A stretch of DNA of 63,120 nt, filler included, from Octopus bimaculoides (GCF_001194135.2; 3 parts of 3 records of this genome joined end to end with filler, not necessarily neighbours in it), one strand, 5' to 3'; shown: positions 1,851-29,564, numbered from the whole stretch's first letter. Made by a program: numbers and translations. The notes: a model not told the origin generated them from the letters alone.

Positions 1851-2339
1851 CTTATTATTATTATTATCGGAAGTAGTTGTGTCTTATCTATTATTGTGTA
1901 TCACTTTGTGTGCCTTGCTGTTCTTCCTGCATAAAAGGTGAATTATTTAAATATAAAATATTTCTCCGAGTTTGAAATTTCCCCAGTGAGAAAGTCAGAG
2001 AGAGGAGGAGATAGAGAGAAAGCGAGTGAAAGATAGAGATAGAGAGAAAAGATTCTAGGTTAAATTAATGATACTGTCTGCCACTGACGCAACACAATGA
2101 AGTTATTGTAGTGTAACAGCAAAGGGAGAACACCCATCATCAGCGCAGCCTTATCAGAAATATTTCGTCAAGATAATGACCGCGAAGTAATTTCCTTCAT
2201 CTTGAAATATGTTGAATCTATAAATCTATAATGGCCAAGAACTGTGCCTTTCCTAGCCGAGAATATCAACAGTTTATTTAAAGATGTGGTGTTCATATAC
2301 ATATACATACATACACACACTCACACACTTAGATGTACA

Positions 2340-2402
2340 TGTATGTATGTATGTAATTGTATATATGTGTGTGTGTATGTATGTATGTAGTATGCATGTA
2401 TC

Positions 2403-2462
<60 letters not shown>
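2340..2462. repeat. (TG)n/(TATG)n compound microsatellite
   Basis: Direct reading. Confidence 0.9.
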
Positions 2463-2464
<2 letters not shown>

Positions 2465-5717: not shown

Positions 5718-6290
5718 ATCATCATCATCGTTTAACGTCCGCTTTCCATGCTGGATTGAGTGGGACGGTTTAACTGAGGACTGGCAAGCCAGAAAACTGA
5801 ACCAGGCTCCAAACTGATCTGTCAATGTTTCTACAGCTGGATGCCCTTTCTAACGCCAACCACTCCGAGTGTAGTGGGTGCTTTTACGCGCCACAGACAC
5901 GAGGGTCAGTCAGGCGGTTCTGGCAACGACCACACTCAAAACGTATTTTTTACGTACCACCTGCACGGGAGTCAGTCCAGCGGTACTGGCAACGATGGTG
6001 CTTTTAATGTTACTGTCATCAGCCACGTCAGCGATTTTGATTTCACTTGCCTCAACAGGTCTTCGCAAGCAAAGTTTATAGTCCAATGAATGAGGGGTAT
6101 TCATAAATGGGCTGGTTATACACCACTGGCATAGGCCACGGGTTATGGCCTCTTGGCTTGTTGGGTCTTCTCAAGTACAACGTATCTCCAAAGGTCTCGG
6201 TCACTACTCATTGCCTCGGTGAGGCCCAATGTTCGAAGGTCTCATCTCAGGTCTTCCTGGGTCTACCTCTTCCACAGGTTCCCTCATACA
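5718..6290 (-). mobile_element. RTE-clade LINE 3' end with (GAT)n tail
   Basis: Minus strand encodes the RTE C-terminal motif EGTCGRGRPRKT, followed by a long 3' UTR ending AAACGATGATGAT. Further copies at about 6610-6900(-), 7355-7570(-), 17045-17270(+), 22460-22762(+), 25640-26025(-), 29339-29505(-), 34010-34545(-), 35650-35815(+), 38960-39270(+), 40160-40295(-), 47445-48365(-) and 49835-50380(+). Confidence 0.8.
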
Positions 6291-7866
6291 TAATAAAAAA
6301 AAATTAACTACAGTACCGTGCAAAAAGTCTTCGGCCACTTTAAACTATTGCGTCTTTTACAGATGAAACATTGGCCCTGTTGGAGTCATTTCCATACCTA
6401 ATCTTTATATTTTGTAGTAGGGGTTCTGAATGAGAGATGTGAGACGACTACCAAAAATGGCCATGCAAAAGTTTTCGCTCACCTCAAATAAACCAATCAA
6501 GATAGTGTTTTAAAACAGAAAAATATCTATAACGAAAATGTATTACATAATGTTCATTTCACGAAGTTTACTGTATACATTGTTAATATTTCGTGTGGCT
6601 TCCCATAGCTTGAATAATTGCTGGCATGTGTTGGACTGTTTGACTGCAAACTGGTAAGCTGTACCAGGCTCCAATCTAATCTGGCAATGTTTCTACAGTG
6701 TAGTGGGTGCCAGTTACGCAGCACCGGTATCGGCCACGACAAAGATCTCACTTGGGTTGACAGGTCTTCTCAAGCACAGTATATCGCCAAAGGTCTCGGC
6801 CACTAGTCATTGCCTCTGAAATTATGCTTCACCACCTCATCCTGTCTCCCTGTCTCCACCTCTTACACAGCTGTCCTCGTCCATATGCACCACATGACCA
6901 TACTGTCATCTTTTTCCAATATTGAGAACATCCAGCCGTAGAAAATCTGCATCAATAAATTCTGTCTGATCCATGTAAGCATGGAAAAGTGGACGTTAAA
7001 ACACTGATGAACACACACACACTACCTCAATGACTTCATCTAGCCACTCTTCAGCCAGCATCATCTGCTCCCATGGACACACAATAAAGATTGGTTGGAA
7101 ATAGATGACCTCATTTAAAAATTGTTGGAGGCAATTATCTGATCTCTTATGACCCAACCTGATTCATGGTCAGCTGATATTGTTTGCTGGTTTCTCACCA
7201 TTGCACACCAATCATGATTACTTTGCAATTATTCTTTCGTCAACATGGGTTAATTTCAAGAAATATAGCAGACATATTTTAACTTTTAGTAAATTTCTTG
7301 GTGAATACAAATTTCTTAGTATTACCTTAGAATAAAGTTGAATGAAATAGCCAGATCATCATCATCATCATCGTCGTTTAACGTCCGCTTTCCATGCTGG
7401 CATGGGTAGGATGGTTTGACTAGGACTGGCAAGCAAGAAGGCTGCACCAGGATCCAATCTGATCTGGCAATGTTTCTACAGCTGGATGCCCTTCCCAACG
7501 CCAACCACTCCAAGAGCATAGTGGGTGCTTTTTATGTCACCGGTATGAGGGCCAGTCTGGCGGAAGTGTTGTTCACATGCCAGTATGGGAACACTGAGTT
7601 TTAAAAAAGAACAAAACAAGAAAATGCCACATTAATTTCATATTATGGAAGTTCACATACACACAGTGTATGTAACATTCCTCTACTCACTTTCTGGCAC
7701 AAAGCCTAATATATGTACTCATCCTGCACCTCAACTTGGTGTCTTTTTTCTACTCTCTTGTGACCAAAGGAATCAATCAACCAACCAACCAACATTCATT
7801 ATATAGACATAAATCTCAATTAGGAACAAGTAATAAAGAACAAAGACATGTCAAGATTTTCCAGTG

Positions 7867-7902: not shown

Positions 7903-8076
7903 CTAAGAAGTAGTAGAAGTGGCTTTTCCTGCAGTTTTGGATTCAACTTTGGCGGCAGCTCGTTTGGCCATTTTAATTTTGTGTCTCTCCTCCCGCAGCT
8001 GTCTCCTATCTTCTTTTGGAATTAATTTGTTGTGTTTTCGAGCAAACCGAAGATTTCTCAGATACTTCCTGTCAAC
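7903..8076 (-). CDS. RPL29: 60S ribosomal protein L29 (eL29), last coding exon
   Basis: TTTGCAG acceptor, then VDRKYLRNLRFARKHNK (eL29 motif VDPKFLRNxRFAKKHN) plus a K/R/A-rich tail and stop; phase 0, matching the preceding exon. Confidence 0.95.
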   Translation of the reverse strand, partial: VDRKYLRNLRFARKHNKLIPKEDRRQLREERHKIKMAKRAAAKVESKTAGKATSTTS

Positions 8077-8770: not shown

Positions 8771-8835
8771 ACCTTTCATTGAAGGACATCTGAATCTCTT
8801 TGGTCTGTAAATACCATTACGGTGAGCTTTGCTGT
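8771..8835 (-). CDS. RPL29: 60S ribosomal protein L29, middle coding exon (65 nt)
   Basis: TTTCAG|ACAGCAAAGCTCACCGTAATGGT...ATGAAAGGT|GTAAGT = (N)SKAHRNGIYRPKRFRCPSMKG; phase 1 in, phase 0 out; joins both flanking exons in frame. Confidence 0.95.
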
Positions 8836-8915
8836 CTGAAAGAATGCAATGTGGACATAGAATAAATAATAATACAAGTCCAGATATAAAGTTGTTAATG
8901 TAAATATTTCACAGG

Positions 8916-9058
8916 TCATGTCCCTGGGGTTCAACGGCACACCACAGTCAATGCATGACTGAGATGCTTCCTATCCAGGATTTGATGTTATCTCCTGTAA
9001 ATGTTTACTGGCAGAGATGTAGTCATTAGAGAGGCTACCCTCCGTGGCTGGAGATGTT
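8916..9058 (-). ncRNA. SNORA65: Box H/ACA snoRNA, SNORA65/snR34-like, copy 1
   Basis: Hairpin-ACAUCA (H box)-hairpin-ACA+3 nt; pockets GCCAC/GCCAGU and GAUAGGAA/GCCG; 3' end 80 nt upstream of the RPL29 exon acceptor. Confidence 0.85.
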
Positions 9059-9605
9059 GCAATAAAATGAATGAAAATAATAATGGTTTCAGATTCTGTT
9101 AGAAGGGGAGCAATCTTGGAGGTGAATCAATTACATCGACCCCCCAGTACTCAACTGGTACTTTCTAAAGATGAAATCTTGCAAACCAGATAACCATTCA
9201 CTAATATTAAATCAGGGCAACATGCTAAAAGTAACAGCCAAAACTCATTCAAATCATACTAAACTGAAAGCTAGTGTATCTAGAACTACAATATCTTGTC
9301 TGAATTATAAGAGATGATCATAGCTGCTATGGTTTTCATTGCAAGTCTTAAGGTTATACAAAGGCTACGAAATTGAAAAACTTGAGGGAATTCATAAATA
9401 CAATTATCTAACAATTATTGTTGAAAATACAAGAATCAATTATTTTAAACATTGGTGTAAACTATGTATAAATAGAGGAAAATGGGAAACAGATCCTTGG
9501 AATATTGCTACTATGTACCCCTAAAGCCCTGCTCAAGCCTATTAAAATTAAATCTAAATTTATTGCCCTAACTAAAATTTATAAGATTTAGCTGAAAGTC
9601 AGCGT

Positions 9606-9794
9606 TAGTGTCCCTGGGGTTAAACGGCACACCACAGTCAATGTATGACTGAAATGCTTCCTATCCAGGATTTGATGTCATCTCCTATAAATGTTACTGG
9701 NNNNNNNNNNTCCAGGATTTGATGTCATCTCCTATAAATGTTACTGGCAGAGATGTAGACATTAGAGAGGCTACCCTCCGTGGCTGGAGATGCT
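9606..9794 (-). ncRNA. SNORA65: H/ACA snoRNA copy 2 (interrupted by a 10-N gap with overlapping read ends)
   Basis: All boxes and guides present; 9665-9700 is repeated at 9711-9746 across the gap (assembly overlap). Confidence 0.8.
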
Positions 9795-11418
9795 GCAATA
9801 AAACGAATCAAAAATAATATTGGTTTCAAATTTGACCAGCAATTTTGGTGGAGCAGATGAGTCAATTACATTGACCCCAGTAGTCAACTGGTACTTATTT
9901 TATCAAAAGGATGAAAGGTAAAGTCGACTTTGGTGGAATTTGAACTCAGAACATAGCAACAGGTGACATACTGCTAAGCATTTCATCCAGCACGCTAACG
10001 ATTCTGCCAACTTGCCACCTTAATAATAATATGTAAGAGGAAGAAGTTGATAAACCTTCAATATTCTAAAGATGAAATCTTGTAAACCAAATAACCATTC
10101 ACTAATACTGAATCAGGGCAACATGCTAGAAATAACAGCCAAAACTCATTCAAATCATATTAAAGTGAAGGATGGTGTATCTAGAACTACATTATCTTGT
10201 CTGAATTATAAGAGATGATCATAGCTGCTATGGTTTCGGTTAATTTTAAACGAAGGTTACTGAANNNNNNNNNNNNNNNNNNNNNNNNNNNNNNNNNNNN
10301 NNNNNNNNNNNNNNNNNNNNNNNNNNNNNNNNNNNNNNNNNNNNNNNNNNNNNNNNNNNNNNNNNNNNNNNNNNNNNNNNNNNNNNNNNNNNNNNNNNNN
10401 NNNNNNNNNNNNNNNNNNNNNNNNNNNNNNNNNNNNNNNNNNNNNNNNNNNNNNNNNNNNNNNNNNNNNNNNNNNNNNNNNNNNNNNNNNNNNNNNNNNN
10501 NNNNNNNNNNNNNNNNNNNNNNNNNNNNNNNNNNNNNNNNNNNNNNNNNNNNNNNNNNNNNNNNNNNNNNNNNNNNNNNNNNNNNNNNNNNNNNNNNNNN
10601 NNNNNNNNNNNNNNNNNNNNNNNNNNNNNNNNNNNNNNNNNNNNNNNNNNNNNNNNNNNNNNNNNNNNNNNNNNNNNNNNNNNNNNNNNNNNNNNNNNNN
10701 NNNNNNNNNNNNNNNNNNNNNNNNNNNNNNNNNNNNNNNNNNNNNNNNNNNNNNNNNNNNNNNNNNNNNNNNNNNNNNNNNNNNNNNNNNNNNNNNNNNN
10801 NNNNNNNNNNNNNNNNNNNNNNNNNNNNNNNNNNNNNNNNNNNNNNNNNNNNNNNNNNNNNNNNNNNNNNNNNNNNNNNNNNNNNNNNNNNNNNNNNNNN
10901 NNNNNNNNNNNNNNNNNNNNNNNNNNNNNNNNNNNNNNNNNNNNNNNNNNNNNNNNNNNNNNNNNNNNNNNNNNNNNNNNNNNNNNNNNNNNNNNNNNNN
11001 NNNNNNNNNNNNNNNNNNNNNNNNNNNNNNNNNNNNNNNNNNNNNNNNNNNNNNNNNNNNNNNNNNNNNNNNGGATTAAGCCAACAGACATGTTACTACA
11101 AAATAGCATCAAGTTAGAAGCTACAATGCTTCATTGACTATTGTATCATTACATCTTTCAACACAGATTTGTCAATACATATCCAAAATTATTGCCTGGT
11201 TAAGCATACGCGCTTTTATCTACAGCCAAACTGGGATTATCAACTGAAATAATCCATTTATTTCTTTGATCCAAACCACTCATTAGACAGTGGCCAAGCC
11301 ACAGCTCCACCATAAAGGTCTTAGACAATTATGTCAGCCTCACTACTTCATCTATTGATTTCTTTTATTGTCTATCAAATTCCAGTGTTAACCTCCAAAG
11401 TCTCAAAGTAGAAGATAC

Positions 11419-11470
11419 CTGCCCTTAACATTGTCTAATAAGAATGGACTTCTTCAGCATGGAACCATTT
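11419..11470 (-). other. Candidate 52-nt non-coding/poison cassette exon (a)
   Basis: CTACAG|AAATGGTTCCATGCTGA...GGGCAG|GTATCT; acceptor 76 nt downstream of snoRNA copy 3. Confidence 0.45.
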
Positions 11471-11546
11471 CTGTAGCAAGTCCTTTAACAGAAAACTAAA
11501 TCACTTCAAATTCCACGAGACATTAGCATCTGAAGACAAAATGATA

Positions 11547-11689
11547 AAATGTCCCTGGGGTTAAACGGCACACCACAGTCAATATATGACTGAAATGCTT
11601 CCTATCCAGGATTTGATGTCATCTCCTATAAATGTTTACTGGCAGAGATGTAGACATTAGAGAGGCTACCCTCCGTGGCTGGAGATGCT
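11547..11689 (-). ncRNA. SNORA65: H/ACA snoRNA copy 3
   Basis: Same fold, boxes and guides; ends GGGACATTT. Confidence 0.85.
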
Positions 11690-12823
11690 GCAATAAAACA
11701 GACTTACTTTGTACAATATACAATGTTTATTTGTTGTGTATCTCATCTAGACAAGTCATAGACCTATGGAGTTGTTGTCCTCCCTACTTTGCTGTACACC
11801 AGTCAGACACTGACAGTTCACAGGCACACATCAAGTTGAATCACATCTGAACTAACAATGCTGGCTGCTGTACTCGACAAACCCCAAAAACATTGAGCCC
11901 ATCCCTGTTGCCCACAGCAACGAGACTTGTCAGGTCACATTTGCCAGAATGATTGAGAAAATAACATTAATTTGGTGGTGTGGATGTTGCAGCACAAATT
12001 CTACAAGGACTTCCCTCAAAGACTGCAGAAAAGATTTTAGCGTTAACCCAGTCATGGGTTCTGCTCCTGAGAGATCAACCAGCTGCTATCAAGAAAGTTA
12101 CACTTGAGCAGAAGAGCCAAGCTAATGATGCCTAAAGCCAGTAGGGGGAGCTGCCAGCCATTAGTCACATCATCAGCATCACCCACATGGATGTAAACAC
12201 AAAGGTTTTTTACACACATACATTTTGTGAAGGCTTAATGGTGAGGGTATCTGACTCACGGTCATGAGTTCAATTCCAAACAGCACTCTATATCCTTGAG
12301 CAAGACGCTTCATTTCACATTGCTCCAGCCCACTCAATTGGCAAAAACGAGTTGTATCAGGAGTTCAAAGGGCCAGCCTCTTCATATTGTGTCATGCTGA
12401 ATCTCCGTTAAAGGTAGTTGTGTCTGTGGAGTGGTCAGTCACAAGCAGGCTGTACAGTTGATCAAATCAACTGGAACATTCGTCATCATAACCAATGGAG
12501 TGTCACTGTAAATCTGACAGCAGAGCCTGACACGATCTGCTGGCTCGCCAGGTCCTGTCAACCTGTCCGACCCATGCCAACATGGAAAATGAATGTTAAA
12601 TGGTGTTATGACGACCCAATGATAGCAATACAAGGAGACTAATGCACATCCATAATGGCATAAGTACCATGCTGCAGGATTGAACAAGAAACCATGTGAT
12701 TGTGAAGGAAACTTAAATACCACACAGCTACAAGTGTGCCTAAGGACAAATATACCTTGGAATCTTCTGTAAAAAATATTGTAATTGAATCAAACTGCAG
12801 CACTTATCACTGCTCAAACTAAA

Positions 12824-12965
12824 CTATGTCCCTGGAGTTCAACGGCACACCACAGTCAATGCATGACTGAGATGCTTCCTATCCAGGATTTGATGTTATC
12901 TCCTATAAATGTTACTGGCAGAGATGTAGTCATTAGAGAGGCTACCCTCCGTGGCTGGAGATGTT
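12824..12965 (-). ncRNA. SNORA65: H/ACA snoRNA copy 4
   Basis: Same fold, boxes and guides; ends GGGACATAG. Confidence 0.85.
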
Positions 12966-13536
12966 GCAATAAAATGAATGAAAATAATAATGGTTTCAGA
13001 TTCTGTCAGAAGGGCAGCAATCTTGGAGGAGGTGCTTCAATTACATCGATCCCAGTACTCAACTGGTACTTTCTAAAGATGAAATCTTGCAAACCAGATA
13101 ACCATTCACTAATATTAAATCAGGGCAACATGCTAAAAGTAACAGCCAAAACTCATTCAAATCATACTAAACTGAAAGCTAGTGTATCTAGAACTACAAT
13201 ATCTTGTCTGAATTATAAGAGATGATCATAGCTGCTATGGTTTTCGTTGTAAGTCTCAAGGTTATACAAAGGCTACGAAATTGAAAAACTTGAGGGAATT
13301 CATAAATACAATTATCTAACAATTATTGTTGAAAATACAGGAATCAATTATTTTAAACAGTGATGTAAACTATGTATACATAGAGAAAAATGGGAAACCG
13401 TTCCCTGGAATATTGCTACTTTGTACCCGTAAAGTCATGCTCAAATCTATTGATCCCTAAAAAAGATTTTTTTAAAAATCAAATCTAAACTTATTGCATT
13501 AACTAAAATTATAGGATTTAGCTGAAAGTCAGCGTT

Positions 13537-13679
13537 AAGTGTCCCTGGGGTTAAACGGCACACCACAGTCAATGTATGACTGAAATGCTTCCTATCCAGG
13601 ATTTGATGTTATCTCCTGTAAATGTTTACTGGCAGAGATGTAGTCATTAGAGAGGCTACCCTCCGTGGCTGGAGATGCT
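13537..13679 (-). ncRNA. SNORA65: H/ACA snoRNA copy 5
   Basis: Same fold, boxes and guides; ends GGGACACTT. Confidence 0.85.
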
Positions 13680-13843
13680 GCAATAAAACAGACAACAGAA
13701 TAGAAGTTACTATAGGACACTCAACAAAGCCTCACTCCTTAACATTCACAGTATCCTGTCACATGTAATGCCTATTTATTTGTATTGTTTTGAATTAACC
13801 ACGCATTATCTGGTAGCATCGATGTGAATGATATGATTGTTGG

Positions 13844-13927
13844 TTTTAGAATGACACTGCAAGGTAGGTGTGAGAGGCCAGACATTGCCGACCTCTCACT
13901 TCTACCCCCAACAATGTTATTCTGAAA
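13844..13927 (-). other. Long imperfect stem-loop (pri-miRNA-like) in the RPL29 intron
   Basis: AGAAT.ACATTG / GGTAG / GTGAGAGG / TCGG pair with CTGG / CCTCTCAC / CTACC / CAGTGT.ATTCT. Confidence 0.55.
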
Positions 13928-14355
13928 CAAGCAGAATGTTTTGGCCAGGTTAAATGCTAAATGGATTAAACGGACAAAAATTGACATCTCTTTGCATGTC
14001 ACATCCTTATCAAGACTGAAACAAGTTAATGTTAGTATAATAAAAATAAAATAAAAAAATGATTCATTTATTGGCCAGAAGGGCTAATCAGCAGCAGCCT
14101 ACAAGAGTTGAAGGATTTCTGTTGATTCAATTCACAGAAGAAAACATTAATGGCTATCTATGAATTTAGCAAGAGCTACGATAAACAGTTCATAGTAACT
14201 GGATTGAAAAGCCAACACTACATTGCCATGAAGGACACCAGCACCTAAAACACACCTTAATAACACTTAAACGTCATTAGGAAAAGTAAATATTTTAAAA
14301 GTAATTTATTCACTACTTCTGAAATGATTCAGAGAAAAGTTAGGGAATTTACAGG

Positions 14356-14497
14356 ATATGTTCCTGGGGTTAAACGGCACACCACAGTCAATGTATGACT
14401 GAAATGCTTCCTATCCAGGATTTGATGTCATCTCCTGTAAATGTTTACTGGCAGAGATGTAGACATTAGAGAGGCTACCCTCCGTGGCTGGAGATCT
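14356..14497 (-). ncRNA. SNORA65: H/ACA snoRNA copy 6
   Basis: Same fold; basal pair of hairpin 2 is U-A instead of U-G (CCAGGAACATAT). Confidence 0.85.
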
Positions 14498-16387
14498 TTC
14501 AGTAAATCAGATGGGAATATAGGAGGAACACAAGACAAAGAAGTTACCATTGGACATTTGGCAAACAGAGGAACTTGTAACCTAACTGTGATCACAGAGT
14601 TCAAGTACTTCATTCTAATTTAAGATTTCAATATTTAATTAGATAATAAACTAAACAACATTTTTACTGAGTAAGGCCAGTAGTTGTTCATTCACACTAA
14701 ATTAAAAGATATTTTTGTATCTAGAATTACATTAATTATCTAGAATTACATCAATCTGGTCTGAAATCACAGACACAAATGCAACAAATACTATTCAATA
14801 GAAAAACACTGGGAAACTCATTTTATCAAAAGGATGAAAGATAAAGTCGACTTTGGTGGAATTTGAACTCAGAACATAGCAACAGGTGACATACTGCTAA
14901 GCATTTCATCCAGCACGCTAATGATTCTGCCAACTTGCCACCTTAATAATAATATGTAAGAGGAAGAAGTTGATAAACCTTCAATATTCTAAAGATGAAA
15001 TCTTGTAAACCAAATAACCATTCAATAATACTGTATCAGGGCAACATGCTAGAAATAACAGCCAAAACTCATTCAAATCATATTAAAGTGAAGGATGGTG
15101 TATCTAGAACTACATTATCTTGTCTGAATTATAAGAGATGATCATAGCTGCTATGGTTTCGGTTAANNNNNNNNNNNNNNNNNNNNNNNNNNNNNNNNNN
15201 NNNNNNNNNNNNNNNNNNNNNNNNNNNNNNNNNNNNNNNNNNNNNNNNNNNNNNNNNNNNNNNNNNNNNNNNNNNNNNNNNNNNNNNNNNNNNNNNNNNN
15301 NNNNNNNNNNNNNNNNNNNNNNNNNNNNNNNNNNNNNNNNNNNNNNNNNNNNNNNNNNNNNNNNNNNNNNNNNNNNNNNNNNNNNNNNNNNNNNNNNNNN
15401 NNNNNNNNNNNNNNNNNNNNNNNNNNNNNNNNNNNNNNNNNNNNNNNNNNNNNNNNNNNNNNNNNNNNNNNNNNNNNNNNNNNNNNNNNNNNNNNNNNNN
15501 NNNNNNNNNNNNNNNNNNNNNNNNNNNNNNNNNNNNNNNNNNNNNNNNNNNNNNNNNNNNNNNNNNNNNNNNNNNNNNNNNNNNNNNNNNNNNNNNNNNN
15601 NNNNNNNNNNNNNNNNNNNNNNNNNNNNNNNNNNNNNNNNNNNNNNNNNNNNNNNNNNNNNNNNNNNNNNNNNNNNNNNNNNNNNNNNNNNNNNNNNNNN
15701 NNNNNNNNNNNNNNNNNNNNNNNNNNNNNNNNNNNNNNNNNNNNNNNNNNNNNNNNNNNNNNNNNNNNNNNNNNNNNNNNNNNNNNNNNNNNNNNNNNNN
15801 NNNNNNNNNNNNNNNNNNNNNNNNNNNNNNNNNNNNNNNNNNNNNNNNNNNNNNNNNNNNNNNNNNNNNNNNNNNNNNNNNNNNNNNNNNNNNNNNNNNN
15901 NNNNNNNNNNNNNNNNNNNNNNNNNNNNNNNNNNNNNNNNNNNNNNNNNNNNNNNNNNNNNNNNNNNNNNNNNNNNNNNNNNNNNNNNNNNNNNNNNNNN
16001 NNNNNNNNNNNNNNNNNNNNNNNNNNNNNNNNNNNNNNNNNNNNNNNNNNNNNNNNNNNNNNNNNNNNNNNNNNNNNNNNNNNNNNNNNNNNNNNNNNNN
16101 NNNTGACTATTGTATCATTACATCTTTCAACACAGATTTGTCAATACATATCCAAAATTATTGCCTGGTTAAGCATACGCGCTTTTATCTACAGCCAAAC
16201 TGGGATTATCAACTGAAATAATCCATTTATTTCTTTGATCCAAACCACTCATTAGACAGTGGCCAAGCTACAGCTCCACCATAAAGGTCTTAGACAATTA
16301 TGTCAGCCTCACTACTTCATCTATTGATTTCTTTTATTGTCTATCAAATTCCAGTGTTAACCTCCAAAGTCTCAAAGTAGAAGATAC

Positions 16388-16439
16388 CTGCCCTTAACAT
16401 TTTCTAATAAGAATGGACTTCTTCAGCATGGAACCATTT
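16388..16439 (-). other. Candidate 52-nt non-coding/poison cassette exon (b)
   Basis: CTGCAG|AAATGGTTCCATGCTGA...GGGCAG|GTATCT; acceptor 76 nt downstream of snoRNA copy 7. Confidence 0.45.
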
Positions 16440-16515
16440 CTGCAGCAAGTCCTTTAATAGAAAACTAAATCACTTCAAATTCCACGAGACATTAGCATCT
16501 GAAGACAAAATGATA

Positions 16516-16657
16516 AAATGTCCCTGGGGTTAAACGGCACACCACAGTCAATGCATGACTGAAATGCTTCCTATCCAGGATTTGATGTCATCTCCTATAA
16601 ATGTTACTGGCAGAGATGTAGTCATTAGAGAGGCTACCCTCCGTGGCTGGAGATGCT
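16516..16657 (-). ncRNA. SNORA65: H/ACA snoRNA copy 7
   Basis: Same fold, boxes and guides. Confidence 0.85.
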
Positions 16658-17616
16658 GCAATAAAACAGACAGGAATAGACATGGCATGGACGAATACAA
16701 GTTACTATAAAAGATTTGATCAACTTTAGCATTTAATCCAACCAAATTATTCTCTGTTTTAAGTTCAACCTAGCCAGATCTTATGTCTCCTACAATGTAA
16801 TTTTGAGATTATACAATCACATCACTGAAATCTCAATGCCACAAGGTGATGATCAGTTGAAAATAATATGAATAAATAAGCATTACATTTGACAGAGTAA
16901 TTTGAATGCGAAGGCATTAAACACAAGCATTTGACATCCCTATGCAGCCCAGCTCAAGTACTCAAGTCTAAGTAAAAAAATAATTTAAAATGTGAATTTT
17001 ATAAATGTAATTACACAATGGTCATTGCTGTTAATATAACCATCTACCGATGCCAGTACTGCCTGACTGGTCCTCATGCCAGCGGCACATAAAAAGCACC
17101 CACTACACTCTCAGAGTGGTTGGCGTTAGGAAGGGCATCCAGCTGTAGAAACATTGCCAGATCGGATTGGAACCTGGTGCAGCCTTCTGGCTTACCAGCC
17201 CTCAGTCAAACCGTCCAACCCATGCCAGCATGGAAAGCGGATGTTAAATGATAGTGATGATGATGATCTACATCAATTTGTTGTGTAAGTAAATATTGTA
17301 ATCCTGTGAAAAGCAACCAAACCTCACTACCCTCCACCTGCTAACCCAACCAGGTTCAAATGAAACTGTTGACACACAAAACCACAAAACATCCTAAAAG
17401 GACAAAATGTCTGAGTCCTGTGATCGTGCAAAGACTCCATCTTTGAGGGATTTCATCAATAATACTGCTTCGAGGACTTTACTGATCTATTTATTTAACT
17501 GCAAAAATTATGAGTTACCAAGGATACCACAGTTAAAACACACACAGATGGACCTCCACAACAGTTGCATTTCCACTTACAAGTCATCCATCAACACAAG
17601 TCTATACAGAAGTTAC

Positions 17617-17668
17617 CTCATCTGAAAACTATCTCGAGGGAATGGACTTCTTCAGCATGGAACCATTC
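17617..17668 (-). other. Candidate 52-nt non-coding/poison cassette exon (c)
   Basis: TTGCAG|GAATGGTTCCATGCTGA...GATGAG|GTAACT; acceptor 54 nt downstream of copy 8; in frame with the first coding exon it reads R-M-V-P-C-stop. Confidence 0.45.
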
Positions 17669-17722
17669 CTGCAACTAGTCCTCAAGTTCCATGAAACATT
17701 AGCATCCGAAGACAAAATGATA

Positions 17723-17864
17723 AAATGTCCCTGGGGTTAAACGGCACACCACAGTCAATGCATGACTGAAATGCTTCCTATCCAGGATTTGATGTCATCT
17801 CCTATAAATGTTTACTGGCAGAGATGTAGTCATTAGAGAGGCTACCCTCCGTGGCTGGAGATAG
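17723..17864 (-). ncRNA. SNORA65: H/ACA snoRNA copy 8
   Basis: Same fold, boxes and guides; homology ends at the 5' basal stem. Confidence 0.85.
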
Positions 17865-18389
17865 GCAAAAGTGGAAAACTCAGAGCAAACCAAATGTTTA
17901 TACAACTAAAGATGGATGTATGGTTGAGAAACTTGTACCCAAACTGTATAGCCATGTGGGTTTGGGATTCTGCCCCTCTGCATGGCACTTGGGCAAGCAT
18001 CTGCTACCACAGCCTTGTGAGAGGATTTGGTGAATGGAAACTGAAAGAAGCCCATCCGTGCATGTGTGTGTACCCTAGTCTAGACATCACGTGACGGTTA
18101 TAAATGTTCCATCATCATCATCATACAAGCTGTGTTTTCTGTTTCCAGAGTTCCATGAAAAACATGCCTGAGCCATGAGGAATATTAGCATACTTTGGAA
18201 CTGGTGAGAATTGGTGACAAGAAGGGCAACTGGGTGCACAAAATCCAAGAAATTCTGTCTGAACCCTGCTTGCATGGGTCAGATGAAATGAACTCATCCA
18301 GACCCAACATTGGGGGAGACAGACAGAGAGAAAATACACCCAAGTCAAATTCTGAACAACAATAGTAAAAATAAAACAATGATTAACAT

Positions 18390-18554
18390 ATAGGTGCAGG
18401 AGTGGCTGTGTGGTAAGTAGCTTGCTTACCAACCACATGGTTCCGGGTTCAGTCCCACTGCATGGCACCTTGGGCAAGTGTCTTCTACTATAGCCTCGGG
18501 CCGACCAAAGCCTTGTGAGTGGATTTGGTAGACGGAAACTGAAAGAAGCCCGTC

Positions 18555-18628
<74 letters not shown>

Positions 18629-18815
18629 GTGTTTGCGTGTCTGTGTTTGTCCCCCCACCATTGCTTGACAACCGATGGTGGTGTGTTTACCTTTCCTTAA
18701 CTTAGCAGTTCGGTAAAAGAGACCGATAGAATAAGTACTAGGCTTCCAAAGAATAAGTCCTGGGGTCGATTTGCTCGACTAAAGGCGGTGCTCCAGCATG
18801 GCCGCAACAAGTAAA
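18390..18815 (+). mobile_element. SINE family B copy (tRNA-like head GGAGTGGCTGTGTGGTAAG...GGTTCAGTCCC, internal TA microsatellite)
   Basis: Further copies or fragments at about 17905-18065, 23120-23280, 25245-25380, 28245-28370(-), 28985-29330, 34935-35325(-), 37500-37725, 39940-40130(-), 46560-46780(-), 46840-47240(-), 47275-47430, 48385-48570 and 62550-62945(-). Confidence 0.8.
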
Positions 18816-18872
18816 AGAAAATAGAGAAAGAGATAGAAAATAGTAAAAATAATTAAATAAAACGAAACTCAC

Positions 18873-18909
18873 TTTGATTATGATTTGTATGATTCTTTGA
18901 CTTGGCCAT
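18873..18909 (-). CDS. RPL29: 60S ribosomal protein L29, first coding exon
   Basis: ATGGCCAAGTCAAAGAATCATACAAATCATAATCAAA|GTGAGT = MAKSKNHTNHNQ, the invariant eL29 N-terminus; upstream acceptor TTTCCAG. Confidence 0.95.
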
Positions 18910-21857: not shown

Positions 21858-24626
21858 TCTAAATACATGTGAATGTTTAACACACCAGGGGCAGACCCAA
21901 ATGAAGAATTACTCCAATATTTTGATAAGTGCAGCCATGTCTCGTGTGCCCTGCTTCTTTGGAAAGGCTGGCCATGCCTGATCTTCACCATCGACCCCTG
22001 ATGTAGGGATTATAGAAGGTGCCATTTTCAGAGGCAGAGGCCCTCATTTTCCTGCTGACGGAGCAAGTGGGGAGAACCTCAGTCCAAGACTTGACACCTT
22101 AGTTTACTAAAATGGTTAAAGGCAGAATTGGTCTCAGCAAGATTTCAACCAAGAGCATGGAGTATTAAAACAAATAACACAAAGCATTTTCTATGCAATG
22201 CTATAACTGTATGCTTGTGGGCTTTTCATCCTTCAGGGGTTGCTAAATTAGATCTTAATCAAAATCTGTCCTCAATTCCCCACTTTGAATATGTTGGAGT
22301 ATGAGGAAGGGCTGAACACACAAGACAAACCTTCCTCTAGAAGAGGTCCAGTAATGTATTATAGAAATAGGTTAACTGGAATATGGTCATAAATAATATT
22401 TGTGGATGGTTATTGCTTGTGGTTAAATGAAGTTTTTCACTGCATCTTCTTTATGTATCTCTCATCTCGAGCGAGATCGTTGCCAGTGCCCCTGGACTGG
22501 CTCCTGTGCAGGTGGCACGTAAAATACACCATTTTGAGCGTGGCCGTTGCCAGTTCCGCCTGACTGGCCTTCGTGCCGGTGGCACGTAAAAGCACCCACT
22601 ACACTCTCAGAGTGGTTGGCGTTAGGAAGGGCATCCAGCTGTAGAAACTCTGCCAAATCAGATTGGAGCCTGGTGTAGCCATCTGGTTTCACCAGTCCTC
22701 AGTCAAATCGTCCAACCCATGCTAGCAAGGAAAGCGGACGTTAAACGACGATGACGATGATCCACACTGGTGAAAGGATGGGTGACTGAATTAAAACCCT
22801 AACCCTAACCCTAACTGCTGTTTAAAAATAACAGGTTCCCACACACAAGTAACAGAATTCTTGTACAGAAATATAATCAAAATGTTCAGTGACACAGAAT
22901 TCAGCTTTGGGGTCAAATGTGCTGTTGCAGATGAGGGCATAAGTGTAATGGGAACACTTAGAAAGGGTTGGGTTGTAGAATATAAAAGTTCCAAGACTAC
23001 AAAGGGATAAATAAGGAATAGAAGCTGCAAGACAAAAGGTAATAGAGAATGGCAGTTCTCTGTGAGAACTGCATGAATTCAGTGGGAGTGTGGAGTTGGC
23101 TAATTTCTATTTAGCCAACATGGTTATGTGGTTGGAAAGTTAACTTCCAAACCTTGTGGTATCAAGGTTCAGTCCCACTGCATGGAACTTTGGGCAAATG
23201 TCTTCTACTGTAGACTTGAGCCAGTCAGAGTCTTGTGAGTTGATTTGATAGATGGAAACAGAAGCAGCTTTTCATATATAATGTATGTGCATGTTTGTGT
23301 TTCTCTCAGGTTCTTTTGAAGAAAATTCAAACTAAATATGTCAACTAAAACCCTTCTCATACAATAGTTATATAAACCCGCTATTAATTACATTTACTGA
23401 TAACAGAGATGCTGGTAATGATGAGGAGAAACTCCAGTTGTATGACTGGTCATAGAAATATTTACTTTTATCAATGCTAGGTGAATGAGAAACCTTTAAA
23501 GTGATAATCCCCACTAATCTGAAAAGAGGAGAAAAAAAGAAAAAGAAAAAAACCCCAATTCCTATCTTTACTGACTCCATAGCAACAGCAACCACAGCTT
23601 CTAAATTGAAAGCGCTAAAGAAGAGATAAGTAAATACTTACTGAGATAACCATGGAGAGACCGACTCTGAAATCCCCATAAACCCGAACATCTAAGGAAA
23701 AGTTGGCTTTCATGTTGAGCCTTAACAACAGCTGCCACCTCTAAGTTTTTTTAAGAGCAGGAAGAACTAAAAAGTGCGGAAACTGTTTGAAACAGACGCA
23801 AGAATATTTGCTATAGTGATTAAATATTATTAATGGGGATGGNNNNNNNNNNGGGGGGGGGGGGTAGTTTTCATTGGTTTTAAATAGATAAGACGGAAAT
23901 TATCTAGCCTAAGTTTATAATGCTCAAGAAAGATTTGAAATTAGCAGATTAGGTGATAGATCCAATTTATTTTAAGTAATACTAACATTATTGATGTGTG
24001 ATTATACCTTGAAATGAAGCACAATTTAATTGAAAATAAAGCTACCTGAGATAACAAGATAGATCAAAGAGATTCCTATGAAATTACTCAAGAACAACAA
24101 AATAACTGCAAATCTGCTGTAGAAAGACCTATTTTGGCATTTTCTATTGAAAACAGTCTGTACACACATAGGAAGATGTTGGACTGTGACTAGCATTGAT
24201 TCCAACACCTCGTCATTAGTTTTGATCTGGTGTCACAATGTGCCCTGTACAGTCTGTGAAGCAGTTGATAAATAAGCAGACAAGGGGAACATTTAGTCTC
24301 GTCTTATCGAGGACATGACATCTTCTCTGGTGTTGCTGCCATGGGAAATATAACATGGTATATGGTGAAAACTGGTCGGGGTTAGGGTACTGAATCAAAA
24401 AAAACTAAACCAAAAATATAACAGGATACGATTGTTCCAGTTGGGGTACAAAAACAGTGAGTCCCCAAAAGACTTACTCAAGACTGTGATGATCTGCTTC
24501 ACACAAGACACAATGGAAAACACACATAAAATGAAGTTCTTTACTTTCCAAAATCAAATCAACATACACCATACAGAAGAGAAATATCAACATGGCTATA
24601 ATCATTGTCTTTTTTTATTTTCACAG

Positions 24627-24830: not shown

Positions 24831-26759
24831 GTAAGGAATTGGAAATGTAACAATACTTATTTTCATTTCTCAACAAGGAACACAAATTGAATGAGATTCA
24901 CTTTACTACCACAAGGGCCAACTTTCCATTGAATCCTTTGAAAATAGACTGAAACTAAACCATTCCCTAAATGTCAAGAAACCATTACAATCCAAACTAC
25001 CAACTAAATCAGTCAAACCCGTTTCTATCTCATTGAGACGTGGTTTACGAAAGACAGGAAAGAATAATCTTTATTTCCATTAGGTTATTGAAAACATGCA
25101 GCAGCCAATAAGTAGAGATGTTAATTAATGAAATGAAATGTACCCACAACATGTCTGATAAATCAATCAGTTACAACTGTCCCCACCACTGGGGGGCACC
25201 AGATATTTTTCACTGTTCAATTTGACAAAGTTACAGGGGCAGGTAGGATTGTGTGGTTTGCTTCTTAACCCCCAGGGGTTTGGGGTGTGGCCCTACTGTA
25301 GACTGACATCTGTCAAAGCCTCAGGAGTGGTAATGGCAGATGGAAACTATATGGAAGCCCATTGCAAGTGTGTGTATTGTGTGAAAGTCAACTCAGTGTT
25401 CACATGAGCACTGTTTGAGTGGAAAACAGAGACATTGCTTCTCCAGTAAACAAATGATCCTTAAGTATATAAAGCAGGAACAAGACAACCAGTGGAATGA
25501 ATGTCTTTGACCAACAATGGTGAATCTGAACTCTTAATATGTATACCTTGACATCTCTTATTGAAAATGAATTAATCTCATGTCTTAATCTGATTTTAAT
25601 CCTTATGGAACGAATATAGTTGTTAGCCAGTCATTTATAGAATCATCATCATCATCATTTAACGTGTTTTCCATGCTGGCATGGGTTGGACGACTCGACT
25701 GGGGCCTGGGAAGCCAGGAGGCTGCCCCAGGCTCCAATCTGATCTAACAAGGTCTCTACAGCTGGATGCCCTTCCTAATGCCAACTACTCTGAGTAGTGG
25801 GTGCTTTTTATGTACCACCGACACAGGGGCCAGAGGGGGCTGGCAACGACCATGATCAGTTGGTGCTTTATACATGCCACCGGCACGGAAGCCAGTCAAG
25901 GCAGCACTGGCATCAACATTCGGACGGTGCTTTTTAAGTGCCACCGGCACGGAGATCATAACTACAATTTCCATTTGATTTTGATATACTTGACTTGACA
26001 GGCCTCCTCAAGTATGGCATGTCGCCCTAAGAATATAGTCACTTTGATAATTAGTCATAAAATACATAAATACTTTCATTTATTAAATTGAAATAAAAAT
26101 TAATTTACTTGAGTTAATTATAAAAGATAAAACACAAAAATCCATGTAAACTATTGCTATAACCTTCAGAATATTGACAGCACTGAAGAAGTTGGTACCT
26201 GAAAGTATATCTGCAAATATTAAAGGAAAAACTATACAATTACTTCAGAATTGTAGCCCTGACTTGTTTCAGTTGTCCATTTTTGTCTTTGTCCTAATCT
26301 CTGCCAAAACAACCCCCACCAGACTTCAATTTTAATTTTGTATCATTTTGCATTCACATACCAGATCCGATTTTGTGGGGGAAATTACTAAATATAATTT
26401 TTCATACTAATTACAAAAATAACCAGTTTCTTTCGAAATAATATCTTCATAATACTGCAAGTGTAACGACCGTGACTTGCAGCATCAGAAACTGTTATAT
26501 CTGATGAATTTCAAAAACTGTTCCATTTTTATTCGTCTGTAATGCCTTTATCTTTAATTTCTCCAATAAATGGTTATGATTCATGTAATTAACAAATGAA
26601 AAATTCCATGTGTAAAAATTTCCAAAAATTGAATTTGGTAAATGAAACTGGAAAGGTCCACTATGAAAGGGGCTGTCTATAAATTAAGGTTATAAAATGA
26701 TAAATTTGATGCCCCAATTTTACAAGACATGACTAACTGTCAGTTTTATTTCTTTGCAG

Positions 26760-27523
26760 GTACAACCATTATGACAATCATTTTAATTGCTTATAACCGT
26801 TACAAACTTGTGGGAAACTACCACAGATATATCGACCATTTCAACCAAATCAACATTGCAGCAATGTTAAGTGTTGCATGGTTGTTGCCATTGCTGTGTC
26901 TGCTGCCGCCATTATTAGAAGTTTGGGGAAAATTTGGTTACGTGGAGAGACTAGCAACGTGCAATCTATTTGAGGACAAACAGTATTTCAAAGACATTTT
27001 ATTGTTGCTACGCACTCTTGTGCCAAGCATAATAATCATCTACTTTTACATAGGGATCTACCAAGCATCTAAGGCCAGCCACCTAAGAATGCCTTCTTTA
27101 AAGGATTCCATTAATTCACAGCAGCGAGAACGAAATGAGAAACGAATGACCAAGATGATGTTAACGATTATCTCCCTTTTCATTTTATTTTACTTCCCGT
27201 GTACAATCACTGCTATAATAGATCTCTATTATATTCTTTCAAAGCCTCACCACCTATTCTGTAGGTTGTGTATTTATTTTGGAAGTGCTGTAAACCCTGT
27301 CATCTATGGCTTGATGAATTCACAATTCAGTCATGCATACAAAAAACTCATCAGCTGCAGACTTAAAAAAATAAACCCTAACATTCCACCCATCACTGTA
27401 ATCCACTTAAGTACCCTCATAACAAAACCCTCCACACAACTACGAGTCACTTTCCTGTCCACTCTGCCCAAAAACACAGACACAAACCTACCAAATAACG
27501 AATTACATCAAACATTATGCTAA
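26760..27523 (+). CDS. Class A GPCR (moody/Tre1/GPR84/melatonin-receptor-like), coding exon 3
   Basis: TTTGCAG|GT; IAYNRY (TM3), WLLP..LP.LL.VWGKFGY..RLATC (TM4/ECL2), FYFP (TM6), NPVIYG (TM7), helix 8 FSHAYKKLI; spliced total 377 aa. Confidence 0.9.
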
Positions 27524-29512: not shown

Positions 29513-29564
29513 TTCCCATGCCGGGAATCGAACCCGGGCCGCCTGGGTGAAAGCCAGGAATCCT
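29513..29564 (-). pseudogene. 5'-truncated tRNA-Glu(UUC) copy
   Basis: AGGATTCCTGGCTTTCACCCAGGCGGCCCGGGTTCGATTCCCGGCATGGGAA: anticodon arm, T arm and 3' acceptor strand; first ~20 nt missing. Confidence 0.85.

What the first reader, a model, noticed from the sequence alone, without database searches (positions are those of the whole stretch)
16516..16657. Both pockets point at peptidyl-transferase-centre uridines of 28S rRNA (snR34/U65 sites)
Hairpin 1 pocket strands GCCAG-U and GCCAC are complementary to the conserved 28S sequence ACUGGC-[U]U-GUGGC (6+5 bp). Hairpin 2 strands GCCG and GAUAGGAA are complementary to CGGC-[U]C-UUCCUAUC (4+8 bp). These correspond to yeast 25S psi2826 and psi2880 (E. 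coli 2457 and 2511 equivalents), both guided by snR34 / human U65. The rRNA sequences are recalled from conserved eukaryotic 28S, not from this species. A large-subunit protein gene would thus carry an amplified guide for large-subunit catalytic-centre modifications.
Basis: partly seen in the sequence, partly recalled or inferred. Interest (0 to 1): 0.7.

Follow-up and report, generated by a model that had tools for sequence, protein, structure and literature searches.

The report
Octopus U65/snR34-type pseudouridine guide array
The interval is one of eight near-identical copies of a small nucleolar guide RNA packed into one intron of the octopus ribosomal protein eL29 gene. Its two guide pockets match the two ribosomal RNA uridines, in and beside the catalytic centre, that yeast snR34 is known to convert to pseudouridine; the RNA itself is an ordinary kind, but its multi-copy arrangement and pocket spacing are unusual.

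Summary

**What it is.** Window 16654-16516 (minus strand) folds as a box H/ACA snoRNA: two hairpins, H box ACAUCA, and ACA at 16521-16519.

**Targets.**
- The 5' pocket (GCCAC / GCCAGU) pairs 5+6 with ACUGGC-[U]U-GUGGC.
- The 3' pocket (AUAGGAA / GCCG) pairs 7-8+4 with CGGC-[U]C-UUCCUAUC.
- In two complete eukaryotic rDNA units these were the only sites each pocket could pair with. They lie 54 nt apart and align to E. coli U2457 and U2511, the yeast snR34 (human U65 homologue) sites Psi2826/Psi2880.
- The best, though sub-threshold, Rfam match is SNORA65.

**Context.** The host gene is eL29 (RPL29). Eight copies sit in its first coding intron. Octopus sinensis has 14 and Argonauta hians has 13 in the same intron. 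Similarity between copies starts at the first stem and stops at ACA. Guide strands are the least variable class of positions.

**Caveats.**
- Pocket-to-box spacing is 17 nt (3' hairpin) and 22-24 nt (5' hairpin), against the canonical 14-16.
- No copy reaches Rfam's SNORA65 cut-off.
- Octopus 28S, RNA expression and the pseudouridines themselves were not checked.

**Verdict.** A known kind of guide, in a variant form and an unusual tandem intronic array.

The parts
16516..16654 (-). The H/ACA snoRNA copy of the finding (copy 2 of 8): from lower stem AUCUCC to ACA plus 3 nt
   Evidence: Similarity among the 34 copies from three species begins at AUCUCC and ends at ACA.
16643..16647 (-). 5' hairpin, 5' pocket strand GCCAC. 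It pairs with GUGGC, 3' of the target U.
   Evidence: 5-7 bp. 32 of 34 copies are identical; the other two carry a C-to-U change that gives a G-U wobble.
16606..16611 (-). 5' hairpin, 3' pocket strand GCCAGU. It pairs with ACUGGC, 5' of the target U.
   Evidence: 6 bp. Identical in 32 of 34 copies.
16596..16605 (-). Extra unpaired spacer (AACAUUUAUA) between the 3' guide strand and the lower stem. It makes the pocket-to-H-box distance 23 nt.
   Evidence: The distance is 22-24 nt across copies (20 in one). AACA is invariant; the rest varies.
16583..16588 (-). H box ACAUCA (fits ANANNA)
   Evidence: ACAUCA in Octopus copies and ACAUUA in most Argonauta copies.
16568..16574 (-). 3' hairpin, 5' pocket strand AUAGGAA. 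It pairs with UUCCUAU, 3' of the target U.
   Evidence: The same UAGGAA is present in the SNORA65 consensus. Most Argonauta copies have ACAGGAA.
16535..16538 (-). 3' hairpin, 3' pocket strand GCCG. It pairs with CGGC, 5' of the target U.
   Evidence: UGUGCCG is shared with the SNORA65 consensus. Identical in 33 of 34 copies.
16519..16521 (-). ACA box, 17 nt after the top of the 3' pocket
   Evidence: Similarity between copies stops here.
17726..17862 (-). snoRNA copy 1 (the one nearest the 5' end of the intron)
14359..14495 (-). snoRNA copy 3
   Evidence: Its G-to-A change in the lower stem of hairpin 2 turns a U-G pair into U-A.
13540..13676 (-). snoRNA copy 4
   Evidence: (SNORA65, 23.1 bits)
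12827..12962 (-). snoRNA copy 5
11550..11686 (-). snoRNA copy 6
9609..9791 (-). snoRNA copy 7. It is interrupted by a 10-N assembly gap (9701-9710) with the same sequence repeated on both sides of the gap.
8919..9055 (-). snoRNA copy 8. Its ACA lies 81 nt upstream of the intron's acceptor AG.
   Evidence: The last copy sits at a similar distance, about 80 nt from the acceptor, in O. sinensis and Argonauta.
8836..18872 (-). Intron 1 of the eL29 gene, about 10 kb including two N gaps. It holds all eight copies.
   Evidence: Donor CAA A|gt at 18873/18872; acceptor ag|AC at 8836/8835.
18873..18909 (-). eL29 coding exon 1 (MAKSKNHTNHNQ plus 1 base)
8771..8835 (-). eL29 coding exon 2 (NSKAHRNGIYRPKRFRCPSMKG)
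7903..8076 (-). eL29 coding exon 3, through the stop codon

Best explanation
The interval is one gene copy of a box H/ACA small nucleolar RNA of about 139 nt, on the minus strand. It is the octopod counterpart of yeast snR34 and human U65 (SNORA65).

**Shown here:**
- The RNA has the two-hairpin, H-box, ACA architecture.
- Its two internal loops are complementary, in the bipartite H/ACA manner, to the two 28S rRNA sites that align with E. coli U2457 and U2511 (yeast Psi2826 and Psi2880).
- Eight copies lie in sense orientation in the first coding intron of eL29/RPL29.
- Arrays of 14 and 13 copies occupy the same intron in Octopus sinensis and Argonauta hians.

**Inferred:**
- The RNA is transcribed as part of the eL29 pre-mRNA and bound co-transcriptionally by the dyskerin/Cbf5-Nop10-Nhp2 proteins.
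- It is released from the spliced intron by trimming. For the internal copies this would also need cleavage between units.
- In the nucleolus each hairpin clamps its 28S site, leaving the target U and the next base unpaired at the top of the pocket, where dyskerin isomerises the U.
- The long unpaired 3' pocket strands (7 nt in hairpin 2, about 10 nt in hairpin 1) are assumed to loop out or stretch so that the target still reaches the active site.
For: **Architecture**
- MFE folds give the same two-hairpin fold in three species.
- 95.5% of pair cells form standard pairs, against 41-52% when the partners are slid by 1-3 columns.
- One fully compensatory pair (C-G to U-A) and several wobble-to-Watson-Crick changes occur. 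In Argonauta a G-to-U plus C-to-A double change shifts a bulge and keeps the helix.

**Boundaries**
- Similarity among 34 copies starts at AUCUCC and stops at ACA. Flanks differ.
- Only the core can be aligned between Octopus and Argonauta.

**Constraint by class of position** (share of sequences departing from the commonest base, per column)
- guides 0.025
- lower stems 0.029
- boxes 0.065
- upper stems 0.076
- loops and spacers 0.15
- flanks 0.39-0.52

**Targets**
- Each pocket has a unique site in whole rDNA.
- Both sites are conserved in the Rfam eukaryotic LSU consensus.
- They align to E. coli U2457 and U2511.
- snR34 guides Psi2826 (= E. coli Psi2457), and Psi2880 is listed as lost in a strain lacking snR34 with two other snoRNAs; snR34 is the homologue of U65.

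**Family**
- The best Rfam match is SNORA65. It shares UAGGAA...UGUGCCG...ACA in the 3' hairpin.

**Host**
- eL29.
- The last copy lies about 80 nt from the 3' splice site in all three species.
Against: - Pocket-to-box spacing is 17 nt for the 3' hairpin in 31 of 34 copies and 22-24 nt for the 5' hairpin. The literature gives 14-16 nt as needed to place the uridine in Cbf5's active site (PMC6800473; about 14 nt in PMC5778458).
- SNORA65 scores are 19-23 bits against a 70-bit cut-off, and nothing in the window passes any Rfam gathering score.
- RNAalifold on the 34-copy alignment prefers a strand-swapped fold of the 5' domain that closes the pocket.
- Only 4 bp form on the 3' side of pocket 2, where yeast snR34 has 5. 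In yeast, trimming that side slows the reaction 10- to 100-fold.
- Several snoRNAs in one intron do not fit the usual animal route of release by exonuclease trimming alone (own knowledge).
- No expression data, no octopus 28S sequence and no pseudouridine map were available.
Confidence: 0.8

Rival explanations
1. It is a genuine H/ACA snoRNA, but only the 3' hairpin guides pseudouridylation. The 5' hairpin serves RNP assembly and stability only, because its 22-24 nt pocket-to-H-box distance cannot place U2457(Ec) in the active site.
For: - Spacing is 22-24 nt against the 14-16 nt rule.
- Spacer length varies from 20 to 24 nt between copies and species, as if it were not a ruler.
- An alternative fold can close the 5' pocket.
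Against: - GCCAC and GCCAGU are nearly invariant across 34 copies in three species, while the adjacent spacer varies. This is hard to explain unless they pair with rRNA.
- They match exactly the site that the homologous 5' hairpin of snR34 serves.
- If the roughly 10-nt spacer bulges out, lower stem plus guide helix makes about 13-14 stacked pairs, close to the canonical length (inference).
Confidence: 0.25
2. Only the 3'-most copy, about 80 nt from the splice acceptor, is a working snoRNA gene. The upstream copies are unprocessed duplicates carried along by tandem duplication and kept similar by gene conversion.
For: - Only the last copy has the canonical position about 80 nt upstream of the 3' splice site, and it does so in all three species.
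- Animal intronic snoRNAs are normally one per intron (own knowledge).
- Species-specific shared substitutions suggest homogenisation or separate expansions.
Against: - About 30 of 34 copies keep both boxes, all four guide strands and the stems. Clearly damaged copies are few: Ah14026, Ah16092 and Os20278.
- Variation within the copies follows structural class.
- The flanks have diverged far more than the cores.
Confidence: 0.15
3. It is an interspersed or satellite repeat with no snoRNA function, and the rRNA complementarity is coincidental.
For: - It is a multi-copy element of about 140 nt.
- The single-sequence fold is not more stable than shuffles (z = -0.69).
- No Rfam gathering hit.
Against: - Copies occur only in the eL29 intron, all in sense orientation, and nowhere else in the 31.7 kb.
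- The element is kept in Argonauta, where the surrounding intron cannot be aligned.
- Both pockets hit the two sites attributed to a single known snoRNA, snR34.
- The boxes are at the right places.
Confidence: 0.02

Closest known systems
Human U65 / SNORA65 (Rfam RF00302)
   Same: - Box H/ACA, two hairpins.
- The 3' hairpin shares UAGGAA...UGUGCCG...ACA with the family consensus.
- SNORA65 is the best-scoring Rfam family for three copies.
- Hosted in an intron of a large-subunit ribosomal protein gene.
   Different: - Scores are 19-23 bits against the 70-bit gathering cut-off.
- The 3' pocket strand is 2 nt longer (17 against 15 nt to ACA, by my count on the consensus).
- The 5' hairpin does not align to the model.
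- The host is eL29, not RPL12. That human SNORA65 lies in RPL12 is from my own knowledge and was not verified here.
- 8-14 tandem copies rather than one.
Yeast snR34
   Same: - Same pair of target uridines: Psi2826 (= E. coli 2457) and Psi2880 (PMC11121408).
- Stated to be the homologue of U65 (PMC5778458).
- The 3' hairpin pairs asymmetrically, with few pairs on the 3' side and many on the 5' side: 5+10 in yeast, 4+7-8 here.
   Different: - From my own knowledge, not verified here: snR34 is an independently transcribed, single-copy, longer RNA.
- The octopod RNA is intronic, in an array, and has out-of-range spacing.
- No sequence comparison with snR34 was possible with these tools.
Multi-snoRNA gene organisations: Drosophila intronic snoRNA clusters, plant and yeast polycistronic snoRNAs, mammalian SNORD115/116 arrays (own knowledge)
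   Same: Many copies, or several snoRNAs, produced from one transcription unit.
   Different: - SNORD115/116 copies each sit in their own intron of a non-coding host.
- Plant and yeast clusters are mostly not inside a protein-coding intron.
- Here 8-14 copies of one conserved rRNA guide share a single intron of a ribosomal protein gene.
- I found no description of this in the papers searched.
snoRNA-ended long non-coding RNAs (sno-lncRNAs, SLERT; own knowledge)
   Same: They arise when one intron holds two snoRNAs, so the stretch between them is shielded from exonucleases. This intron holds 8-14.
   Different: There is no evidence here that such RNAs accumulate. This is a lead, not a finding.

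Membership tests
Box H/ACA guide snoRNA (class) | Hairpin - H box (ANANNA) - hairpin - ACA architecture | tested here: met
   - MFE folds in three species.
- 95.5% of cells paired on 34 copies, against 41-52% for slid controls.
- ACAUCA/ACAUUA and ACA conserved.
Box H/ACA guide snoRNA (class) | ACA three nucleotides from the mature 3' end | not testable with these tools
   RNA ends were not measured. Similarity between copies stops at or 1 nt after ACA, which is compatible.
Box H/ACA guide snoRNA (class) | Bipartite pocket complementarity that leaves the target U and the next base unpaired | tested here: met
   6+5 (up to 6+7) and 4+8 contiguous pairs around U-N. Each is the only such site in whole rDNA units.
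Box H/ACA guide snoRNA (class) | 14-16 nt between the top of the pocket (target U) and the H or ACA box | tested here: not met
   17 nt (3' hairpin) in 31 of 34 copies; 22-24 nt (5' hairpin), 20 nt in one copy. The rule is as stated in PMC6800473.
Box H/ACA guide snoRNA (class) | Association with dyskerin/Cbf5, Nop10, Nhp2 and Gar1; nucleolar RNA of about 130-150 nt | not testable with these tools
   No expression or protein-binding data were available.
SNORA65 / U65 (Rfam RF00302) | Score at or above the family's gathering cut-off (70 bits) | tested here: not met
   20.5, 23.1 and 19.3 bits (E = 0.95, 0.12, 0.88). Still the best-scoring family for each copy tested. No gathering hit in the window.
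U65 / snR34 functional group | 3' hairpin aimed at the uridine equivalent to yeast 25S U2880 (E. coli U2511) | tested here: met
   The attribution of Psi2880 to snR34 rests on a table of a triple snoRNA deletion in PMC11121408.
U65 / snR34 functional group | 5' hairpin aimed at the uridine equivalent to yeast 25S U2826 (E. coli U2457) | tested here: met
   PMC11121408 states that snR34 directs Psi2826 (= E. coli Psi2457).
U65 / snR34 functional group | Target sequences present in the organism's own 28S, and the uridines modified | not tested
   No cephalopod rDNA was within reach. The argument rests on the Rfam eukaryotic LSU consensus, where both sites are in capitals apart from the first target U, and on more than 120 metagenome contigs that carry both motifs 43 nt apart.

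The most novel reading that the evidence does not exclude
The eL29 intron is more than a container for one guide. It is a conserved, or repeatedly re-expanded, tandem array of 8-14 H/ACA units, and its transcripts cannot be resolved by exonuclease trimming alone. It may therefore yield either a dosage-amplified supply of the guide for these two uridines, through a so far undescribed cleavage between units in an animal intron, or long H/ACA-capped RNAs (sno-lncRNA-like) carrying several snoRNPs. In addition, the extended 3' pocket strands (17 and 22-24 nt) would show that the 14-16 nt ruler of H/ACA RNPs can be bypassed by looping out a spacer.
Probability: 0.15. Interest if true: 0.7.

Novelty: new variant of a known kind. 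Interest (0 to 1): 0.5.

Why it matters
The RNA's specificity is old and well known. Psi2457(Ec) is described as one of the few universally conserved rRNA modifications (PMC11121408). Finding its guide in an octopus is therefore expected, and it fills an annotation gap, because Rfam's model misses it.

Two things are of wider interest:

1. **The gene arrangement.** Eight to fourteen copies of one rRNA guide lie in a single intron of a ribosomal protein gene, and the arrangement is present in two octopod families. This departs from the one-snoRNA-per-intron habit of animals. It raises a testable question: how are the internal copies released, and are snoRNA-capped long RNAs made?
2. **The spacing.** Both pockets lie outside the 14-16 nt ruler, yet their guide strands are under the strongest constraint in the molecule. 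This offers a natural test case for how strict that ruler is.

Tried and rejected
- **Rfam at gathering thresholds** over the whole piece gave nothing. Only E-value mode showed the SNORA65 resemblance.
- **Alternative H box AUAGGA** (13 nt from the pocket) was rejected. It is not conserved (ACCGGA, AUCGGA, AUGGGA in other copies) and would leave no lower stem.
- **Alternative small hairpin GGAGG/CCUCU** in the 5' domain was rejected. U-to-C, G-to-A and G-to-U substitutions in other copies break it, while they fit the long-range upper stem.
- **The strand-swapped fold from RNAalifold** was noted but not preferred. Single-sequence MFE in all three species gives the pocket fold, and the consensus is disturbed by the bulge shift in Argonauta.
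- **Extending the 5'-pocket pairing into the conserved AACA** gave no further complementarity to GGGAUA upstream of the target (by inspection).
- **A second repeated element of 173-210 nt** between copies (for example 13050-13260) was tested as a possible second snoRNA. It gave only a weak ceN108 hit (20 bits), is present in O. sinensis but not in Argonauta, and was treated as duplicated spacer.
- **Gastropod RPL29 loci** (Lymnaea, Bradybaena; Babylonia is an intronless copy) have no U65-like motif or hit.
- **Literature search** on cephalopod snoRNAs found nothing on this array.
- **tRNA scan** found nothing.
- **Fetching octopus 28S through spurious antisense ORFs of rDNA** was considered. 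I dropped it because the site is almost certainly conserved and the search is costly.

Full report
**1. What is in the sequence**

The feature lies on the minus strand. Read that way, window 16654-16516 runs as follows:
- AUCUCC, A, GCCAC;
- a 10-bp upper stem with one bulge and a 12-nt loop;
- GCCAGU, a 10-nt spacer, GGAGAU, one base, ACAUCA, AA;
- UCCUGG, AUAGGAA;
- an upper stem of 11 pairs plus one U-U mismatch, with a 5-nt loop;
- GCCG, UUUAACC, CCAGGG, ACA, UUU.

This is the hairpin - H box - hairpin - ACA plan of a box H/ACA snoRNA.

ViennaRNA gives this fold as the minimum-energy structure of the window copy. The energy is not better than shuffles (z = -0.69), so thermodynamics alone proves nothing.

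**2. It is one of many copies, and the copies define the unit**

blastn of the unit against the piece finds eight copies, all on the minus strand. From AUCUCC to ACA their coordinates are:
- 17862-17726
- 16654-16519
- 14495-14359
- 13676-13540
- 12962-12827
- 11686-11550
- 9791-9609
- 9055-8919

The copy at 9791-9609 is interrupted by a 10-N gap with the same sequence repeated on each side, which is an assembly artefact.

In the alignment of copies, near-identity begins at AUCUCC and ends at ACA. The sequence outside differs between copies, apart from some larger, more recent block duplications.

**3. Host gene**

Stop-to-stop frames and splice sites on the minus strand give a three-exon coding sequence: 18909-18873, 8835-8771 and 8076-7903. 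It encodes a 91-aa protein.

- The protein matches Pfam Ribosomal_L29e (E = 6e-21).
- It is 90% identical to Octopus sinensis RPL29 and 80% identical to that of Argonauta hians.

So the organism is an octopod, but not O. sinensis itself.

All eight copies lie in sense orientation in the single intron 18872-8836. The last copy's ACA is 81 nt before the acceptor AG. Two N gaps in the intron (10265-11072 and 15167-16103) may hide more copies.

**4. Relatives**

The RPL29 loci of O. sinensis (L001) and Argonauta hians (L002) were fetched.

| Species | Copies in the same intron | Identity to the window copy |
|---|---|---|
| O. sinensis | 14 | 93-98% |
| A. hians | 13 | about 84-86% (one partial copy 90%) |

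All copies are sense, and the last one again lies about 80 nt from the acceptor.

Between the window and O. sinensis the intron spacers are mostly about 80-90% identical. Between Octopus and Argonauta, blastn with the snoRNA core matched from AUCUCC to ACA and no further in nearly every copy, and a repeated spacer element found no match.

In the 34-copy alignment, the share of sequences departing from the commonest base, per column, is:

| Class of position | Variability |
|---|---|
| Guide strands | 0.025 |
| Lower stems | 0.029 |
| Boxes | 0.065 |
| Upper stems | 0.076 |
| Loops and spacers | 0.15 |
| Flanks | 0.39-0.52 |

That ranking is what a working guide RNA predicts.

For the structure I named:
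- 95.5% of cells form standard pairs, against 41-52% when partners are slid by 1-3 columns.
- There is one fully compensatory pair (C-G to U-A in 12 Argonauta copies).
- There are several one-sided compatible changes: U-G to C-G, U-G to U-A, G-U to G-C or A-U.

In Argonauta a G-to-U change in one strand of upper stem 1 is accompanied by C-to-A in the other. The bulge moves by two positions and the helix is kept.

Divergence is shallow, so covariation support is modest. The shuffle control does not account for relatedness.

**5. Targets**

No rDNA is in the window, so I fetched eukaryotic rDNA by the two motifs. More than 120 metagenome contigs carry both motifs exactly 43 nt apart. Two of these contigs are complete SSU-5.8S-LSU units by Rfam.

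I scanned all uridines of these rRNAs for contiguous pairing on both sides of U-N. Each pocket has exactly one site with at least 3+3 pairs:
- ACUGGC[U]UGUGGC, with 6+5 to 6+7 pairs;
- CGGC[U]CUUCCUAUC, with 4+8 pairs, 54 nt downstream.

The presence of the sites in these contigs follows from how the contigs were selected. Their uniqueness within the rRNA does not.

Further checks:
- The Rfam eukaryotic LSU consensus shows both stretches in capitals, apart from the first target U itself, which is lower case.
- An ungapped alignment with E. coli rrlH puts the two uridines at 2457 and 2511.
- PMC11121408 states that snR34 directs Psi2826 (= E. coli Psi2457) and lists Psi2880 among the modifications lost in a strain lacking snR34, snR52 and snR67.
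- PMC5778458 calls snR34 the homologue of human U65.
- Independently, the top Rfam family for three copies is SNORA65. Its alignment rests on UAGGAA...UGUGCCG...ACA of the 3' hairpin.

**6. What does not fit**

(a) **Spacing.** I counted from the first base of the 3' guide strand to the base before the box.
- The 3' hairpin has 17 nt in 31 of 34 copies.
- The 5' hairpin has 22-24 nt, and 20 nt in one copy.
- The same count on the SNORA65 consensus gives 15 nt.
- The literature gives 14-16 nt as required to position the uridine.

The surplus is unpaired: 7 nt in hairpin 2 and about 10 nt in hairpin 1. In hairpin 1, apart from an invariant AACA, the surplus varies in sequence and length. If it loops out, lower stem plus guide helix would stack to about 13-14 pairs. 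That is inference only.

(b) **Rfam score.** Scores of 19-23 bits are far below the 70-bit cut-off.

(c) **Alternative fold.** RNAalifold on the alignment proposes a different 5' domain, in which AUCUCC pairs with GGAG and UCUCU pairs with GGAGA. The four strands are similar enough to swap partners. Single sequences from all three species still fold into the pocket form.

(d) **Weaker pairing in Argonauta.** The 5' guide of hairpin 2 in most Argonauta copies reads ACAGGAA, which leaves 5 contiguous pairs on that side, or 9 in total.

(e) **Several snoRNAs in one intron.** These need something beyond exonuclease trimming to be separated (own knowledge).

**7. Mechanism**

Shown:
- the architecture;
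- the conservation pattern;
- the target complementarity;
- the host gene and the array.

Inferred:
- co-transcription with the eL29 pre-mRNA;
- assembly with dyskerin/Cbf5, Nop10 and Nhp2;
- release from the intron;
- pairing with 28S so that the U2457(Ec)- and U2511(Ec)-equivalent uridines are isomerised.

I put about 0.8 on this overall. Within it, I put about 0.75 on the 3' hairpin being active and about 0.6 on the 5' hairpin.

**8. Comparison and novelty**

By function the RNA belongs with U65/snR34. Two membership features fail: the Rfam cut-off and the 14-16 nt spacing. I therefore file it as a variant, not a plain member.

RPL29 introns of two gastropods hold no such RNA. Residence in eL29 may thus be specific to octopods or cephalopods.

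All 13 Argonauta copies share about 15 differences from all 21 Octopus copies examined. This means either separate expansions or concerted evolution. The data do not decide between them.

I found no paper describing snoRNA arrays in cephalopods.

**9. Verdict**

Interest is moderate. It rests on the tandem array within a single intron and on the off-rule pocket geometry, not on the specificity.

Noticed in passing
window 9701-9710 (within copy 9609-9791): A 10-N gap with the same roughly 37-nt snoRNA segment repeated on both sides. It looks like a scaffolding artefact, not a real insertion.
   Followed up: partly
window 10265-11072 and 15167-16103: Two long N gaps inside the eL29 intron. The gap-free O. 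sinensis intron has 14 copies against 8 here, so copies may be hidden.
   Followed up: partly
window 9143-9352, 10064-10236, 13050-13260, 14987-15159 (minus strand): A second repeated element of 173-210 nt lies between snoRNA copies. O. sinensis has 5 copies at 81-92% identity; none was detected in Argonauta. It gives a weak C/D snoRNA hit (ceN108, 20 bits against a 50-bit cut-off). Probably duplicated spacer.
   Followed up: partly
window 16654-16590 (5' domain of each copy): The four strands AUCUCC, GGAGGG, AUCUCU and GGAGAU can pair in two ways: the pocket fold, or two small hairpins that bury the guides. RNAalifold prefers the second on the alignment. This may be a conformational alternative.
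   Followed up: partly
window 26696-27520 (+): A 275-aa open frame matches rhodopsin-family 7TM receptors (Pfam 7tm_1, E = 5e-22). A 7TM receptor gene also lies next to RPL29 in O. sinensis and Argonauta, so gene order is conserved.
   Followed up: partly
window about 5778-6086, 6618-6803, 7410-7601, 22465-22698, 25589-25744, 29405-29635 (both strands): An interspersed repeat shows up as recurring translated strings such as LQSDLAEFLQLDALPNANHSE. It is likely a SINE or another transposon family. ARAGORN finds no tRNA-like head.
   Followed up: no
L124 490-558 and 951-1017; L125 1339-1415 and 2192-2267: In the gastropods Lymnaea stagnalis and Bradybaena similaris, two SNORD57-like C/D snoRNAs (33-50 bits, cut-off 47) lie within 3 kb upstream of the RPL29 coding start on the same strand. 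No U65-like RNA is found there.
   Followed up: no
L123 3001-3180: The Babylonia areolata 'eL29-like' gene is an uninterrupted 180-nt reading frame, which suggests a retrocopy.
   Followed up: no
L002 12039-13374 and 15693-17028: In Argonauta, four copies spaced about 400 nt apart recur as a block about 3.65 kb downstream. This points to a recent higher-order duplication within the array.
   Followed up: no
window 444-899 (-): A 152-aa open frame with a transposon-like look (…DIVVKDRNSKVYLLIDMSIPCDHNI…) has no Pfam match at E <= 0.01.
   Followed up: partly
window 2277-2519 and 18430-18700: Dinucleotide microsatellites. The first translates as runs of CV/TH and the second as runs of IY.
   Followed up: no
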